NCBI GenBank assembly: GCA_044892505.1
Contig: CM097882.1
Coordinates: forward strand, 393,142,001-393,206,000
Direction: 5' to 3'
Length of the DNA stretch: 64,000 nucleotides
From: Schmidtea nova
Taxonomy: Eukaryota
In this document: positions 998 through 61,799 of the stretch, piece after piece
Position numbering within the stretch: position 1 is the stretch's first letter
Layout of the letters: the number at the start of each line of letters is the position of its first letter
Translations under genes and position numbers: made by a program
Notes under the pieces: generated by a model
What the model saw: the letters and a program-made list of their open reading frames with translations, nothing else
Told to the model about the DNA's origin: nothing
Databases searched by the model: none

Positions 998-2251
998 CAG
1001 GGCCAGCCCGAGCTCTTATGGCGCCCTAGGCTAAGGGTCTAAATCTCGCCCCATAAGTTTTAACAAGCAAAAAAAAGAATCAACTAAAAATTTTTTTTTG
1101 TTTAACCTAAATTATGAATTATTAAAAAAATNNNNNNNNNNNNNNNNNNNNNNNNNNNNNNNNNNNNNNNNNNNNNNNNNNNNNNNNNNNNNNNNNNNNN
1201 NNNNNNNNNNNNNNNNNNNNNNNNNNNNNNNNNNNNNNNNNNNNNNNNNNNNNNNNNNNNNNNNNNNNNNNNNNNNNNNNNNNNNNNNNNNNNNNNNNNN
1301 NNNNNNNNNNNNNNNNNNNNNNNNNNNNNNNNNNNNNNNNACATCTGGAGTACAATCAATGATTATTGAATAATATTTATTCAGTTTTATTAAGTTTGTA
1401 ATATTTTCTTTGACTACAGAATTTAACAACGTAATCATTTTATTTTGAATTCTTTTGCCCAAGTAATGTACGTGTAATTCTTTATTTTTTATTTGACGTA
1501 CGTGTTCTTTCAAGATTGGGTCGAATTTGGCTATAAGCTCCAAAATTTTTAAGAATTTTCCATTGTTATCTTCATATAACTTATCAGATGTTCCTCTCAA
1601 AGCACGGTTCTGTGACCCGTGTAACTTAATGATTTCAAATAATCTCTCCAATAGATTTCGCCAACGTATTGTATTTTCATTCACGAGTTTTTTATTAAAT
1701 GAGTCAATAGTTTTTCCTTCATTCAATCTTCTGACTAAGTCATTCCATGTTGATATACATTTTAAGTGTTCAATTGTTTTTTCATGCTCTTTTAATCTGG
1801 CTGACACATTTTTACAATTATTCAATCCATTAACAGTTAGGGAAATTTCGTTATTAGAAAAAAGCTTGCATGCAAAACAGAAAACAGCATCATTAGATTT
1901 TGAATAAACCAACCACTTTCGTTGAATCTTTTCACCGTTAGGAAGTGTTCGATAATAGTTTGTAGAACAAAACTTCCGACTTCTTCCTTCCTTTTCTTGA
2001 ACAGTTAATGGAAAATCAAAATTAATTATTTGCTCTGGTCCACGTCTTACAAGTAAATCGATATTTGGGCCAATATTTTGCGGCCATTTCCCAATATCGG
2101 ACAAATAGTCTTGGATACTTGAAACAACATCTAAAGAATTATGTTCGGAATTTATCGTTTCCGAATGATAATTTATGTCAAATGTGTCATCAATGCTATG
2201 ATCTGATTTGAGATCAGTTTCTGGATTGGAATAATATTCTTCAACGTCCAA
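998..2251 (-). mobile_element. hAT DNA transposon fragment: terminal repeat at 998 plus N-terminal half of a ZMYM1/TTF-zinc-finger type transposase
   Basis: The ORF from 2251 to ~1341 has WLVYS..DAVFCFACKLF (TTF zinc finger), LRG..D...NNGKFL.ILELIAKFD and YYSIIIDCTPD (first catalytic D). CAGGGCCAGCCCGAG...GGCGCCCTAGGC at 998 is a typical hAT end. Too little sequence lies between the ORF and this end to hold the C-terminal half, so it is internally deleted. Confidence 0.85.
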
Positions 2252-2890: not shown

Positions 2891-3821
2891 ATTATTTTTT
2901 TAAATAATATAATAAATAATAAATAATATCAAATTTTAGAAAAATCAAATCTGTCTGTAACGGTGGAAGAATAACTCAAAGAAAAAAAAAACTTCTTCCG
3001 TACTCTTTGTCTGATATTAATATCTTCATTAGGATTTGTTGAATATGAATTCAAACAAAAAAAGAATAAAAATTGATTTTAAATGAATCAAATAATTATA
3101 TATTTTAATTGATATTTAAATAAACATTTGTCATTTTNNNNNNNNNNNNNNNNNNNNNNNNNNNNNNNNNNNNNNNNNNNNNNNNNNNNNNNNNNNNNNN
3201 NNNNNNNNNNNNNNNNNNNNNNNNNNNNNNNNNNNNNNNNNNNNNNNNNNNNNNNNNNNNNNNNNNNNNNNNNNNNNNNNNNNNNNNNNNNNNNNNNNNN
3301 NNNNNNNNNNNNNNNNNNTAAATAATAGTGANNNNNNNNNNNNNNNNNNNNNNNNNNNNNNNNNNNNNNNNNNNNNNNNNNNNNNNNNNNNNNNNNNNNN
3401 NNNNNNNNNNNNNNNNNNNNNNNNNNNNNNNNNNNNNNNNNNNNNNNNNNNNNNNNNNNNNNNNNNNNNNNNNTAATAATTAATGATAATGATTAGAAAA
3501 TAATAATGATTAATAATAATGATTAATAATAATGATGAATAATAATTAATAATAATGATTAATAATAATGATTTTTAATAATTAATAATNNNNNNNNNNN
3601 NNNNNNNNNNNNNNNNNNNNNNNNNNNNNNNNNNNNNNNNNNNNNNNNNNNNNNNNNNNNNNNNNNNNNNNNNNNNNNNNNNNNNNNNNNNNNNNNNNNN
3701 NNNNNNNNNNNNNNNNNNNTTGTGATACCCAGTGCAAATCCAAGTGATGTAATATCCAGTGTACCAGGAATGGTATTTAACAAAGTTTTTTCGACTGTTT
3801 TTTTAAATGTTCGCGTGTTCT

Positions 3822-3868
3822 GCATAGCACTGATGAGAGCTAAAAGTTCGAAACTAGTCTGTTTTTGG
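3822..3868 (+). ncRNA. Type I hammerhead ribozyme, copy 1
   Basis: ATAGCA-CTGATGA-GAGC TAAAA GTTC-GAAA-CTAGTC-TGTTTT. Predicted cleavage after C3859. Stem II has one G-U pair. Confidence 0.85.
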
Positions 3869-4330
3869 CGATTTGCACTGGGTATCACAAAGCTTTACTT
3901 AATAATAATGAATAATAATAACTAATAATAATAATTAATGATAATAATAATAAATAATAATAATAATTAACAATAATATAATGATAATGNNNNNNNNNNN
4001 NNNNNNNNNNNNNNNNNNNNNNNNNNNNNNNNNNNNNNNNNNNNNNNNNNNNNNNNNNNNNNNNNNNNNNNNNNNNNNNNNNNNNNNNNNNNNNNNNNNN
4101 NNNNNNNNNNNNNNNNNNNNNNNNNNNNNNNNNNNNNNNNNNNNNNNNNNNNNNNNNNNNNNNNNNNNNNNNNNNNNNNNNNNNNNNNNNNNNNNNNNNN
4201 NNNNNNNNNNNNNNNNNNNNNNNNNNTTGTGATACCCAGTGCAAATCCAAGTGATGTAATATCCAGTGTACCAGGAATGGTATTTAACAAAGTTGTTTCG
4301 ACTGTTTTTTTTTAAATGTTCGCGTGTTCT

Positions 4331-4377
4331 GCATAGCACTGATGAGAGCTAAAAGCTCGAAACTAGTCTGTTATTGG
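4331..4377 (+). ncRNA. Type I hammerhead ribozyme, copy 2
   Basis: ATAGCA-CTGATGA-GAGC TAAAA GCTC-GAAA-CTAGTC-TGTTAT: complete core, perfect stem II, 6-bp stem I, palindromic ACTAGT stem III. Predicted cleavage after 4368. Confidence 0.92.
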
Positions 4378-4937
4378 CGATTTGCACTGGGTATCACAAA
4401 GCTTTACTTAATAATAATGAATAATAATAATTAATAATAATAATTAATGATAATAATAATAAATAATAATAATAATTAACAATAATATAATGATAATGNN
4501 NNNNNNNNNNNNNNNNNNNNNNNNNNNNNNNNNNNNNNNNNNNNNNNNNNNNNNNNNNNNNNNNNNNNNNNNNNNNNNNNNNNNNNNNNNNNNNNNNNNN
4601 NNNNNNNNNNNNNNNNNNNNNNNNNNNNNNNNNNNNNNNNNNNNNNNNNNNNNNNNNNNNNNNNNNNNNNNNNNNNNNNNNNNNNNNNNNNNNNNNNNNN
4701 NNNNNNNNNCATTAATAATAATCATTAATAATAATGATTAATAATAATGATTAATAATAATGATTAATAATAATGATTAATAATTAATAATAATAATACA
4801 TAATAATAGTAAATTAAAATAATAATTAATGATAATGATTAGAAAATAATAATGATTATTAATAATTTTGAAAAAAATTTGTCGGATGAGTATTTGTTTT
4901 TAACAAGTAAAGCTTTGGGATACCCAGTGCAAATCCC

Positions 4938-4983
4938 CAATACCAGACTAGTTTCGAGCTTTTGGCTCTCATCAGTGCTATGC
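4938..4983 (-). ncRNA. Type I hammerhead ribozyme, copy 3 (minus)
   Basis: Reverse strand reads ATAGCA-CTGATGA-GAGC CAAAA GCTC-GAAA-CTAGTC-TGGTAT. Cleavage between 4946 and 4945. Stem I has one G-G mismatch. Confidence 0.85.
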
Positions 4984-5341
4984 AGGAGACGCGGAAATTT
5001 CTCTCCGCGCCAGGTAAGTATAAAACAAAGTCGAAAGATTTTTGTTATATACTATACCTGGTACACTGGATAAAACATCACTTGAATATGCAAGGTCCTA
5101 CAGATAATCTGTAACTTGCAAACATGGCGTATGAATTTCATTTTCGCCTCTGTGCGCTAAAAGCGTTCAACAGGAGCTGTTTGCAAGCGCACCCGACTGC
5201 CTTAGCTTCATTATTTCATTATTTTCATTTTCATTATTTCAATTACTTGAAATATCTTTTGAAAAAAACATTTGTCGGATGACTTATTTGTTTTTAACAA
5301 GTAAAGCTTGTGATTTTTTGTGATACCCTGTGCAAATCCCC

Positions 5342-5386
5342 AAAAGCAGACTAGTTTCGAGCTTTCGGCTCTCATCAGTGCTAAGC
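5342..5386 (-). ncRNA. Type I hammerhead ribozyme, copy 4 (minus)
   Basis: Reverse strand reads TTAGCA-CTGATGA-GAGC CGAAA GCTC-GAAA-CTAGTC-TGCT. Cleavage between 5349 and 5348. Stem I has G-C where the plus copies have G-U. Confidence 0.88.
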
Positions 5387-5783
5387 AGGAGACGCGGAAA
5401 TTTCTCTCCGCACCAGGTAAGTATAAAAAGTGGGAACAACTTTGTTAAATACCATTGTTAGTTCACTGGATATCACAAAACTTGAAAGCGCAAGGTCTTA
5501 CAGATAAACTGTAACTTGCAAACATGGCGTATGAATTTCATTTTCGCCTCTGCGCACTAAGAGTGTTCAACAGAAACTGTTTGCAAGCGCACCTGACTGC
5601 CTTAGCTTTATTATTTCAATCACTTGAAATATATTTTGAATAACATTTTTCTGATGACATTTTTGTCTTTGACAAATAAAGCTTTGTGATACCCAGTGCA
5701 AATCCAAGTGCAAATCCAGTGTACCAGGAATGGTATTTAACAAAGTTGTTTCGACTGTTTTTTTTTAAATGTTCGCGTGTTCT

Positions 5784-5830
5784 GCATAGCACTGATGAGA
5801 GCTAAAAGCTCGAAACTAGTCTGTTATTGG
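5784..5830 (+). ncRNA. Type I hammerhead ribozyme, copy 5
   Basis: Same sequence as copy 2. Predicted cleavage after C5821. Confidence 0.92.
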
Positions 5831-6492
5831 CGATTTGCACTGGGTATCACAAAGCTTTACTTAATAATAATGAATAATAATAACTAATAATAATAATTAA
5901 TGATAATAATAATAAATAATAATAATAATTAACAATAATATAATGATAATGNNNNNNNNNNNNNNNNNNNNNNNNNNNNNNNNNNNNNNNNNNNNNNNNN
6001 NNNNNNNNNNNNNNNNNNNNNNNNNNNNNNNNNNNNNNNNNNNNNNNNNNNNNNNNNNNNNNNNNNNNNNNNNNNNNNNNNNNNNNNNNNNNNNNNNNNN
6101 NNNNNNNNNNNNNNNNNNNNNNNNNNNNNNNNNNNNNNNNNNNNNNNNNNNNNNNNNNNNNNNNNNNNNNNNNNNNNNNNNNNNNNNNNNNNNNNNNNNN
6201 NNNNNNNNNNNNNNNNNNNNNNNNNNNNNNNNNNNNNNNNNNNNNNNNNNNNNNNNNNNNNNNNNNNNNNNNNNNNNNNNNNNNNNNNNNNNNNNNNNNN
6301 NNNNNNNNNNNNNNNNNNNNNNNNNNNNNNNNNNNNNNNNNNNNNNNNNNNNNNNNNNNNNNNNNNNNNNNNNNNNNNNNNNNNNNNNNNNNNNNNNNNN
6401 NNNNNNNNNNNNNNNNNNNNNNNNNNNNNNNNNNNNNNNNNNNNNNNNGTTATTTTTAAAATAATGATTAATTTACAAATCATCCAACTAAC

Positions 6493-19044: not shown

Positions 19045-22000
19045 CTAGATATCTACTACAAAACTTACCAACTCCGATCCGCGAGTTTTCTTTCTTCCCG
19101 TACAGGTACCATCTGATCCAATTGATCCTCCTCTTGTAATGGTTACTCCCAGTGTTTTCCCTACTTCCGCGGCGATGGTTACCTCGTTATCGATTCTTAA
19201 AGTACCTTTTCGAAAGGCATCCAGACAATCCTCTGGCAATATGTTGACAGGTCTAGGTATTAGAGTGGCTGATAGAAAAGCCGTGTAGCTGTGTGAACCA
19301 CAATAATATTCAAATGTCGCTCTTTGGACTCTACATTCTCTTATCTTAGTTCTGAAGAATTCACTTTCTTGATAGACATAGTATTCGACCTTTTCTCCTG
19401 TTTGGACTTTCTCTGGATATGCCTCTTTGCACTCAATTGCATCTACGAGCGAATATATCCGAGCTAACTTTGGATCACTGCAATCAAACGCTGTCATTGT
19501 GTTTGTCTGTTTCATTATCCCCATCATTACTAAAAACATTAATATCATATTCGTCATATTCCCCATTCCTCCATTTCCGAGGTGGTTGTTATTCATAGCC
19601 TCTTCCACAAATTCATATCGTGGTTTATGTTTCTCCTCTTCCCAGAAGTTATTTTCACTCATCCACGTTCCGAGATAATGCTCCGTTATCTCCGTGATCT
19701 GGTCTATTTCTCGATTAATAAGTTTCTTCTCATTGCCTGCGCGGGCTAAGGCGTCTTGAATCAACATAGATAATGCTGTCACTATTTTTCCTTTAGATAA
19801 CCCATCTTGTATGAGTGTCTCTAACATATTCTGTATCTCGTTTTGAGGTACCCCTTTAGGTAATCTCCTCATCGTCTTCGCGATTGTCTGTGTCACTTTA
19901 TCCACTTGAATTCCTTTAATCCGAGTGATCTGCCATTCCGGCTTTAATATTCCTATGATCTGTTTTAATCTCTTCCATGTCAGAGATTTTTCTGGTATAT
20001 GTACTCCCTCGTCTCTCATATCAACATCCCTGGCTATTCCTGACAGGGTTTTCATCTGAACCTGTTTAATGGTTTCTTGGTTTAATTGCTCCGTTGGGGG
20101 AGGTTTCATTTGATCTTTCCTAGGCCTTCCTCGCCTATCTTTCTTTGTCTGCCATGCTGGCCTGACATTTTCTACCGCCTGAGAAGTTGAAGCTCCCACG
20201 TTAGTTTCCTCATTATTGAGTCTGATTTTCTCTTCTCCGTGATTATCGGCATCGATATCTACATTAAGTGGTTGTGTCTCAACGTTACCAATGACCATTT
20301 CATCTGGTAACCGTAATGCTGACCATTGAGATTCAGGTGGCTCTACGGGAATGATTGCTACCGTTGTAGTTTCAAATGGTAGACATCCCACATCTACTAA
20401 ATATTCATCATCATCCACTTGCCCTCCATGAATCATAATCAAGAATATACCGGTAGTCTGCCCAGTATCTATTAAATCTTTTCTCAACGTTATCACTTTG
20501 CTAAAACAACGATATAATCTCGTCATGGGTTCTTTTCCCAATATTCGAATGTCTAAAGTTATCATGCCTTGTCGGTGTGCTTGATGACGTATTGCTGTTC
20601 CATTTTTCCTCATTAACATTTTTATTTCTGTTTGAAAAGAACTAGTTTCTTTTACTACAGGTAGTAATATAGGAATTATACTCTCCAATGATTCTACTGG
20701 TATGCGCAATACCAACATCCAGTCTAATATTTCCTTGATTGTTTCTCCATCCCTCGGAGATTTCTGCAACTCTATCTTCAGACGTTGCTCTATTTGTTGG
20801 ACTTCCTCCAACTGTGCAATTTCCATTTGTGTGAGTAGAAACACACTGTCTTGATCCACTACTGGGACCGATATTCCTGTCAGTTTTGTTGTGAGTTTCG
20901 TTACCCTTCCTGGTAATACACCATTTTGTAGTAGTGTTTCCCCAACTACTAACTTTTCTCCATATAGATAAAAATCATATCTATTATGTTTCAATTTCGT
21001 CATTGTATCTGACAACTTATCTGTTCGACATCTTACATTCATGTCGATGTTAAACTCCTGCTCCTGAGGAAGTTTTATGTTTAAATGCGAATCCTGAAGA
21101 TCCCATTCATGTTCCATTGCTGTCCCTATCTTTCGTAGGATTCTATGTATGTCGCTATGATACCTTGGATCATCTTCGACCTGAGATATTAACTGTAATA
21201 TCTTTCCAATTTCGCTATTCTTGATATCACCTTGTGATAATTTCTCTAATTCTCTAGTCAGTCTCTGCTGATACTCATATCTGGAATCCACCAGTTTTAA
21301 ACATTTTGCTAGGGTATCTGACCCTTTCTTGGCCTTTGTTTCCTTGAACAAAGCCTGGTCGAACTCGCTCAGTATGGTACTCATACTGAGTTCGTCATCA
21401 TTATCAGAATTTGTTTCTGATTCTATTACCTCATGATTCTCGCTGCTGGAATCCATGGGTTCACTATTTCCTTGCTCATCTGTGTAAGCATCATGATTTT
21501 TCTCAGCTGAAATCATCAAAACTGTTCCTTGCCCAACTGTGTGAGCATCATCGCTTTCCTCAATGGGATTCATTATAACTGTTCCTCGCCCATCCATGTG
21601 AGCATGATTTTTCTCAGCTGAAATCATAAAAACTGTCTCTTGCCCAACTGTGTGAGTCTCATTTATTTCTTCAATTGTATTCATCAAAACTGTTCCTCGC
21701 TCATCTGTGTGAGCATGATTTTTCTCAGCTGAAATCATAAAAACTGTATCATCTCGAACCATTAGCCGTGCTAATCGATTTTTCTCCTCCTGGATTTCCA
21801 TTTCCAGTTGTTGCAAATACGTCAATTCTTTATCGTGATTGACCATGAACGTAGTTTTTGGCTTGCTGACATTACCACTATTGGTAGTCCTACTATTCGT
21901 ATGATTACTCTGATTTTGAGGACACGACCTCAGGATATGCCCGAATTTTCCACACCCGTGGCATTTTATCTTTCCTGATGAATTTACATCATCCCTTTTT

Positions 22001-61312: not shown

Positions 61313-61705
61313 TTTTTTACATAAACATGATTGGAAACTAACTTTTGTCGAGTTATGAATTATCATGTTTATATATTTGTAATTATTATTGGTTGTAAAA
61401 TTATGGAAATAAGTACTTTTTATTTATTGGCATACTATATTAAAAATAAATTAAAATGTATGCATTTTGTTTTTCAGAAAATATAAAAGTTCATTATCTA
61501 ATCGCGTTTTTTTACATATACATGATTGGAAACTAACTTTTGTCGAGTTATGAATTATCATGTTTATATATTTGTAATTATTATTGGTTGTAAAATTATG
61601 GAAATAAGTACTTTTTATTTATTGGCATACTATATTAAAAATAAATTAAAATTTATGCATTTTGTTTTTCAGAAATTAGAAAAGTTCATTATCTAATCGC
61701 GTGTT
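61313..61705 (+). repeat. Tandem duplication with 195-bp period
   Basis: CATGATTGGAAACTAACTTTTGTCG... at 61326 and 61521, near-identical. Confidence 0.9.
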
Positions 61706-61799
61706 TCTAATTACATCAATAAATTTCGACAGAAAAGACACGCAAATTAATATACTACTGTTGGAAGCGTGGATAAGCAACACCAGACATCCATTGGGA

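What the first reader, a model, noticed from the sequence alone, without database searches (positions are those of the whole stretch)
4990..5424. U1 snRNA 5'-end motif built into the hammerhead monomer
Seen: about 30 nt upstream of the ribozyme, both minus units read ATACTTACCTGG(C/T)GCGG (5021-5005 and 5424-5408), followed by a GCGGA/TCCGC hairpin. The plus units lack this ~20-nt block. Established: AUACUUACCUGG is the U1 5' arm that pairs with splice donors, and in U1 it is also a single strand followed by a helix. The rest of U1 (70K loop, Sm site) is not here. Inference: either a captured U1 head, giving a self-cleaving RNA that could mask 5' splice sites, or simply a perfect CAG|GTAAGTAT donor used on the plus strand. 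A chance 12-mer somewhere in 128 kb of both strands is roughly a 1% event, and the two copies are not independent.
Basis: partly seen in the sequence, partly recalled or inferred. Interest (0 to 1): 0.7.

Follow-up and report, generated by a model that had tools for sequence, protein, structure and literature searches.

The report
Hammerhead retrozyme carrying a U1 fragment
A roughly 380-base self-cleaving-ribozyme repeat present in thousands of copies in this animal genome carries the first 17 bases of the host's own U1 splicing RNA. Those bases are predicted to be locked in a hairpin beside the ribozyme, so they look like an old captured fragment and not a working U1 mimic.

Summary
The 12-mer sits on the minus strand at 5021-5010 and 5424-5413. 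The match to the host's best U1 genes runs 17 nt, not 12 (17/17 in unit 1, 16/17 in unit 2), and nothing else of U1 is present.

The block is the consensus of a hammerhead "retrozyme" tandem-repeat family of about 380 nt. The exact 17-mer occurs at 3,687 places and the exact ribozyme core at 3,924. An older, roughly 10% diverged subfamily has the block too.

The three plus-strand units that lack the block are a private deletion. Their signature occurs only in this window.

The block is not predicted to be single-stranded. It forms the 3' arm of a 51-nt hairpin (-21 kcal/mol, z -8.6), paired with a donor-like complement 27 nt upstream. A second hairpin and the ribozyme follow.

Best reading: a U1 5' fragment was captured once, probably by reverse-transcriptase template switching, and kept as a structural arm. 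A free splice-site-masking arm is disfavoured. Use as a plus-strand donor could not be tested because no RNA run was available.

This scan had already reached the same reading on other copies in this genome. It is a curiosity on a known kind of element.

The parts
4946..5348 (-). Complete 403-nt retrozyme monomer bounded by two hammerhead cleavage sites (after GTC at 5349 and at 4946).
   Evidence: 100% self-hit, 88-92% to other genomic copies; alignment to the 380-nt family consensus.
5005..5021 (-). U1-identical 17-mer ATACTTACCTGGCGCGG in unit 1.
   Evidence: Identical to nt 1-17 of host U1 genes L001-L004.
5408..5424 (-). The same block in unit 2, 16/17 (T for C at U1 position 13).
5010..5061 (-). 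Hairpin whose 3' arm is the U1 12-mer and whose 5' arm (5061-5049, CCAGGTATAGTAT) is a donor-like complement.
   Evidence: -17.4 kcal/mol for 5010-5060, z -6.4; consensus copy -21.2, z -8.6. (pairing probability about 1.0).
4990..5009 (-). Second hairpin CGCGGA..TCCGCG; its 5' arm holds U1 nt 13-17.
4935..4993 (-). Type I hammerhead of unit 1: helix I strands, CTGATGAG, helix II GAGCC/GCTC, CGAAAC, palindromic ACTAGT helix III (dimer type), GTC cleavage site.
   Evidence: (HH9, 20 bits, below the gathering score of 52).
5338..5396 (-). Hammerhead of unit 2.
   Evidence: 15.7 bits.
5349..5678 (-). Unit 2, a decayed and partial monomer about 80% identical to unit 1. Its hairpin 5' arm is lost, so its U1 block would be unpaired.
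   Evidence: 5413-5470 folds no better than shuffles.
3719..3900 (+). Blockless short unit (private deletion variant) with an inverted 5' piece, flanked by TAA-rich microsatellite.
4228..4408 (+). Blockless short unit, local duplicate.
5680..5860 (+). Blockless short unit, local duplicate.

Best explanation
The locus holds copies of an abundant non-LTR (animal-type) hammerhead retrozyme. This is a tandem repeat of about 380 nt whose transcript would be cut by dimer-type type I hammerheads into unit-length RNA. The family's genomic habits match elements moved by Penelope-like reverse transcriptases: tandem and head-to-head arrays, 5' truncation, and TAA-microsatellite flanks. The founder of the family acquired nt 1-17 of the host's U1 snRNA, most likely when a reverse transcriptase switched templates at the 5' end of the abundant U1 RNA. 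Every later subfamily inherited the fragment. In the RNA, the first 12 nt form the 3' arm of a stable 51-nt hairpin and nt 13-17 open the next hairpin. Both branch from the extended helix I of the ribozyme. The fragment therefore acts, if at all, as a structural arm of the compact folded RNA and not as a free 5'-splice-site-binding arm. Shown here: the identity, its limits, its family-wide retention and the predicted pairing. Inferred: the capture mechanism, the structural role and the mobilising enzyme.
For: The host U1 genes scoring 111 bits begin with the same 17 nt as the element. The identity starts exactly at U1 +1 and ends at +17. The rest of U1 is absent: local alignment is no better than 121 of 500 shuffles, and there is no Rfam U1 hit at E<=10. 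The exact 17-mer occurs at 3,687 places and the exact ribozyme core at 3,924, with 0 for the reversed controls. Of the first 82 cores, 48 have the exact 17-mer at a fixed offset. Most of the others have 1-3 changes, and the remainder are 5'-truncated array edges. The older subfamily, about 10% diverged against about 1% for the young one, carries the block too. The blockless signature occurs only at three places, all in this window. For the fold, pairing probability is about 1.0 in both linear and circular form, and the hairpin is -21.2 kcal/mol with z -8.6. The young subfamily's 5' arm has a U where the old one has an A.A mismatch, while the U1 arm is unchanged. RT plus GIY-YIG elements are very abundant in the genome, and arrays are tandem or inverted with (TAA)n flanks, as described for Penelope-like elements in PMC8557442. 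There is precedent for U1 capture by template switching in SINEU elements (PMC4494074).
Against: The independent evidence for a U1 origin beyond the 12-mer that triggered the finding is only the 5-nt extension, worth roughly 1 in 300 to 1 in 1,000 by chance. A simple template switch explains the exact U1 +1 junction. It does not explain the internal 3' junction at nt 17, nor how a 12-bp complementary arm came to lie upstream. No RNA data show that the element is transcribed, cleaved or circular in this animal. The sampled Penelope-like element shares no sequence or ribozyme with the repeat. The structure is only predicted, and the copies are too alike to give covariation.
Confidence: 0.6

Rival explanations
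1. Chance or convergence: the hairpin arm merely happens to equal the complement of a consensus donor, with no U1 ancestry.
For: Only 17 nt match, and nothing else of U1 is present.
Against: The match extends 5 nt further, into the host-specific CGCGG. It spans two separate helices, so hairpin symmetry does not explain it. It begins exactly at U1 +1.
Confidence: 0.12
2. Working U1 mimic or U1 sponge: the abundant retrozyme RNA opens the hairpin so that its U1-like arm binds 5' splice sites, or its donor-like arm titrates U1 snRNP and so modulates host splicing.
For: The U1 arm is perfect and was kept unchanged from the old to the young subfamily. Retrozyme circular RNAs are highly expressed in other animals (PMC7229834). 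In decayed copies such as window unit 2, the arm would be free.
Against: The arm is predicted to be paired with probability about 1.0 in a local hairpin that can form during transcription. There is no Sm site, no U1-70K loop and no other U1 part. The donor-like arm reads GA instead of GU in the older subfamily, so it was not a conserved U1 binding site.
Confidence: 0.1
3. The plus (antisense) strand reading CAG|GTAAGTAT is a functional splice donor, for example one that exonises or traps host transcripts.
For: The match to the donor consensus is perfect and is kept in thousands of copies.
Against: The conserved CCGCG upstream of the donor is unexplained by donor function but is explained by U1. 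On that strand the donor lies in a -25.6 kcal/mol hairpin. The ribozyme defines the other strand as the processed one.
Confidence: 0.08
4. The block marks a transcription start. The repeat would have taken over an snRNA-type promoter together with the first bases of U1, as newt satellite 2 uses an snRNA-type promoter, giving a capped short U1-headed ribozyme RNA.
For: Identity begins exactly at U1 +1. There is precedent in Coats et al. 1994, as cited in PMC2220036.
Against: There is no similarity between the 110 nt upstream of the block and the upstream regions of six U1 and two U5 genes. The only shared word (ATATGCAA) is in reverse orientation. The 5' ends of truncated copies do not pile up at the block.
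Confidence: 0.05

Closest known systems
Metazoan non-LTR hammerhead retrozymes (Cervera and de la Pena 2020, PMC7229834) and newt satellite 2
   Same: Tandem repeats a few hundred nt long, each with a type I hammerhead. The very short palindromic helix III implies action as a dimer. There are thousands of copies and a highly self-paired predicted RNA.
   Different: No U1-derived segment is mentioned in PMC7229834 or in the 2026 preprint on retrozymes and Penelope-like elements. Here the consensus carries 17 nt of host U1.
SINEU, SINEs with U1/U2-derived heads (Kojima 2015, PMC4494074)
   Same: A non-autonomous retroelement that has taken up U1 sequence, with template switching proposed as the cause.
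   Different: SINEU heads are long snRNA pieces at the 5' end of a polyA-tailed SINE. Here only 17 nt are present, they are internal to a ribozyme-bounded unit, and there is no polyA.
U1 snRNA (Rfam RF00003)
   Same: Identical first 17 nt, including the 5'-splice-site-pairing arm.
   Different: No stem-loops I-IV, no Sm site and no promoter similarity. The arm is paired in cis.
Penelope-like element pseudo-LTRs with hammerheads (Cervera and de la Pena 2014; PMC8557442)
   Same: Minimal dimer-type hammerhead, tandem and inverted copies, 5' truncation, microsatellite insertion bias. Penelope-like elements are abundant in the same genome.
   Different: There is no RT/GIY-YIG ORF between the units here, and the sampled autonomous element shows no similarity.

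Membership tests
Non-LTR hammerhead retrozyme | Type I hammerhead with conserved catalytic core (CUGAUGA, GAAA, GUC cleavage triplet; helices I and II). | tested here: met
   Five cores in the window against 0.01 expected. Helix I and II pairing read from the sequence. Rfam HH9 gives only 20 bits against a gathering score of 52, so this is met by motif and not by the Rfam threshold.
Non-LTR hammerhead retrozyme | Short head-to-tail repeats (about 170-400 bp), one ribozyme per unit, many genomic copies. | tested here: met
   Period 380-403. Arrays of up to dozens of units. 3,924 exact cores.
Non-LTR hammerhead retrozyme | Self-cleavage, and expression as linear and circular unit-length RNA. | not testable with these tools
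   The only runs found are of unknown kind and kept as contigs.
U1 snRNA gene or pseudogene | 5' arm ACUUACCUG at the RNA's 5' end. | tested here: inconclusive
   The sequence is present, but it is internal to the ribozyme-bounded unit and no start-site data exist.
U1 snRNA gene or pseudogene | Four stem-loops and an Sm site. | tested here: not met
   No RF00003 hit at E<=10 on 3400-6000. The remainder aligns no better than shuffles.
SINEU-type snRNA-headed SINE | A long snRNA-derived head at the 5' end plus a LINE-type tail or polyA. | tested here: not met
   Only 17 nt, internal, and no polyA tail in the consensus.
Penelope-like element pseudo-LTR | Repeat flanking an RT plus GIY-YIG ORF. 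| tested here: not met
   No such ORF lies between the units. The sampled element L070 shares no sequence.
Functional 5' splice donor on the plus strand | Spliced reads with the junction at 5013/5014. | not testable with these tools
   No RNA run was available.

The most novel reading that the evidence does not exclude
The retrozyme RNA carries an intramolecular copy of the U1:5'-splice-site duplex. This either engages U1 snRNP or spliceosomal proteins, or breathes open so that a very abundant circular RNA acts as a U1 decoy or sponge. That would link a selfish ribozyme repeat to control of host splicing.
Probability: 0.07. Interest if true: 0.8.

Novelty: new variant of a known kind. Interest (0 to 1): 0.35.

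Why it matters
If the reading holds, hammerhead retrozymes can pick up and fix pieces of spliceosomal RNA, as crocodilian SINEU elements did. That would give a dated marker for how Penelope-type reverse transcription switches templates. It also offers a cheap test case for whether an abundant structured repeat RNA with a perfect U1 arm interacts with the splicing machinery. As it stands, the evidence points to a passenger turned structural arm, so the practical value is mainly for annotation. Thousands of perfect U1 5'-end or consensus-donor 12-mers in this genome belong to one repeat family and should not be read as U1 genes or splice sites.

Tried and rejected
- **Rfam:** nothing at gathering threshold on the whole window. 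A genome-wide RF00163 search scored too few candidates to be useful.
- **Rest of U1:** the remainder of U1 aligned against the permuted consensus is not significant.
- **Promoter capture:** upstream regions of six U1 and two U5 genes were compared with the element. No shared motif in the same orientation was found. The U2 search failed on the server.
- **Autonomous partner:** Penelope-like elements are abundant. The sampled copies have no hammerhead by pattern or by Rfam, and no blastn similarity.
- **Expression:** The look-up of sequencing runs gave four runs of one study, of unknown kind, with Nextera adapter ends and kept as contigs. They show only that the repeat is abundant.
- **Relatives elsewhere:** three pattern scans of metagenome and viral contigs found nothing.
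- **Block decay in old copies:** the block looks less decayed (4%) than the core (10.5%). I rejected this as evidence because I had chosen those copies by eye.
- **Inversion junctions:** head-to-head array junctions do not fall systematically at the hairpin. One case does (L056), the others do not.

Full report
**Observation.** The minus strand reads ATACTTACCTGG at 5021-5010 and 5424-5413. These are the only two matches in the 64-kb window even with one mismatch allowed (expected 0.17; no shuffle reached two). In both units a 20-nt hairpin follows, then a hammerhead core 29 nt further on. Five cores are present: two on the minus strand (4975-4951, 5378-5354) and three on the plus strand (3830, 4339, 5792). 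Rfam gives only sub-threshold HH9 matches (20 bits against a gathering score of 52). Even so, the catalytic boxes, helix II and helix I can be read directly from the sequence. Helix III is the palindrome ACTAGT with no room for a loop, which is the dimer-type minimal hammerhead. The two minus-strand cleavage sites bound a 403-nt monomer (4946-5348).

**How far the U1 identity goes.** The window lies in a 1.25-Gb genome. Its best U1 genes score 111 bits and sit in two clusters on C1. All begin ATACTTACCTGGCGCGG and then continue TTTAACC. Unit 1 of the window matches all 17 of these bases and unit 2 matches 16 of 17. After nt 17 the sequences part. The rest of U1 aligned to the circularly permuted family consensus scores no better than 121 of 500 shuffles. 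No U1 hit appears even at E<=10. Upstream of the block only three T's are shared with the U1 genes. No motif is shared in the same orientation with the upstream regions of six U1 and two U5 genes. The identity therefore starts at U1 +1 and ends at +17. Because the 12-mer is what triggered the finding, the independent evidence is the 5-nt extension into a host-specific variant. Other U1 paralogues of this genome read CGTGA at those positions. By chance the extension is worth roughly 1 in 300 to 1 in 1,000.

**Family census.**
- The 403-nt unit matches more than 100 scored places at 88-92% identity, out of 1,783 first-look candidates. Many lie in arrays with a period of 380-382.
- The exact 17-mer occurs at 3,687 places and the exact 32-nt ribozyme core at 3,924, with zero for the reversed controls.
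- Of the first 82 cores on C1, 48 have the exact 17-mer at the fixed offset. Most of the rest carry it with one to three substitutions. About seven are 5'-truncated array edges or inversion junctions.
- A 380-nt consensus built from 35 non-redundant monomers is very homogeneous, with median divergence 0.3%.
- An older subfamily was picked up by an anchor outside the block (143 places, dispersed, about 10% diverged). It carries the block almost without exception.
- The two subfamily consensuses differ at eight positions in the 75 nt upstream. They do not differ at all in the 125 nt that run from the hairpin's 3' arm through the block, the second hairpin and the ribozyme.

**The blockless plus units.** The three plus-strand units align to the consensus with a clean 21-nt gap where the block and four following bases should be. 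Their junction signature occurs exactly three times in the genome, all in this window. This is one deletion followed by local duplication, together with the adjacent TAA-rich microsatellite. It is not a second kind of monomer.

**Structure.** Folding the consensus as linear or circular RNA gives the same picture.
- Ribozyme helix I extends into a junction from which two hairpins branch.
- The first hairpin (consensus 266-316) pairs the U1 12-mer with CCAGGUAUAGUAU lying 27 nt upstream. That is 12 bp with one bulge, continued by 10 more pairs, and every base of the 12-mer has pairing probability 0.91-1.0.
- U1 nt 13-17 form the 5' arm of the second hairpin.
- The first hairpin alone folds at -21.2 kcal/mol (z -8.6). 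Its complement folds at -25.6 kcal/mol (z -9.4).
- Window unit 1 keeps the hairpin (-17.4 kcal/mol, z -6.4). Unit 2 has lost the 5' arm, and there the block would be free, but that unit is a decayed copy.
- In the older subfamily the 5' arm reads GA where a donor would need GU, which makes an A.A mismatch. The young subfamily has U at that position and pairs, while the U1 arm is unchanged. This is consistent with selection for the hairpin and argues against the arm being a conserved U1 binding site.
- The copies are too similar for a covariation test.

**Context.**
- Arrays are often head-to-head and begin in (TAA)n tracts.
- Dispersed copies are 5'-truncated.
- The genome holds thousands of RT plus GIY-YIG candidates with intact ORFs of about 855 aa, themselves arranged in tandem and inverted copies.
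- These are the habits described for Penelope-like elements (PMC8557442). A 2026 preprint argues that animal retrozymes are their non-autonomous derivatives (10.64898/2026.07.22.740005).
- The sampled autonomous copies share neither a ribozyme nor any sequence with the repeat, so the partner element is not identified.

**Literature.** Neither the founding paper on metazoan retrozymes (PMC7229834) nor the 2026 preprint mentions snRNA or splice motifs in these elements. U1 and U2 pieces are known to be added to non-autonomous retroelements, with template switching as the proposed cause (SINEU, PMC4494074). Newt satellite 2, a hammerhead repeat, is reported to use an snRNA-type promoter (Coats et al. 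1994, cited in PMC2220036). I could not read that paper.

**Expression.** They confirm abundance and variant junctions. They say nothing about RNA, strand, ends or splicing. Pattern scans of metagenome and viral contigs found no relatives.

**Verdict.** This is a known kind of element, an animal hammerhead retrozyme, with an unreported feature: a 17-nt piece of the host's U1 5' end fixed in the family consensus and predicted to be locked in a hairpin next to the ribozyme.
- I put 0.6 on capture followed by a structural or passenger role.
- About 0.12 goes on coincidence.
- About 0.1 goes on a real U1 mimic or sponge.
- About 0.08 goes on a used antisense donor.
- About 0.05 goes on a start-site or promoter origin.

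Earlier notes of this scan on six other copies in the same genome reached the same reading. They are not independent evidence. One of them calls the host a flatworm, which I did not test.

Noticed in passing
window 3474-3589, 3900-3988, 4409-4497, 4711-4867, 5862-5950; L040:960-1315: Retrozyme units and arrays abut TAA-rich microsatellites, here and at other loci. This suggests insertion bias into (TAA)n, like the microsatellite bias reported for Penelope-like elements.
   Followed up: partly
G000 C1:338222000-338238000 (L069), L070:1786-4350: Very abundant Penelope-like elements (RT plus GIY-YIG, intact ORF of 854-856 aa, 3,407 first-look candidates) in tandem and head-to-head copies with a period of about 3.1 kb. 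No hammerhead was detected in the sampled family.
   Followed up: partly
G000 C2:312959679-313028186 and 314005095-314031634: Long tandem arrays (period about 2.5 kb) of a divergent U1-like gene (86-91 bits) that starts ATACTTACCTGGCGTGAAG. Further variants with altered 5' arms (AAACTAACCTGG, AAACTTACTTGG) lie beside the canonical U1 genes.
   Followed up: no
G000 C1:508465527-508470671: U5 and U1 genes lie together in a palindromic cluster, with mirror-image copies on both strands. Upstream regions share an ATGYAAA-like word at about -65 to -75, a candidate proximal element.
   Followed up: partly
L056 (G000 C1:13551151-13552276): Two arrays meet head-to-head exactly inside the U1 block and hairpin, giving a long perfect palindrome. 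Other inversion junctions lie elsewhere in the unit.
   Followed up: partly
window 1343-2251 (-): Open frame of about 300 codons running into an N block. The only Pfam hit is a weak zinc-finger match (PF25431, E 0.01). It may be a transposase remnant.
   Followed up: partly
window 21492-21747 and 61313-61706: Tandem repeats of 111 bp (2.3 copies, 88%) and 195 bp (2.0 copies, 97%), unrelated to the retrozyme.
   Followed up: no
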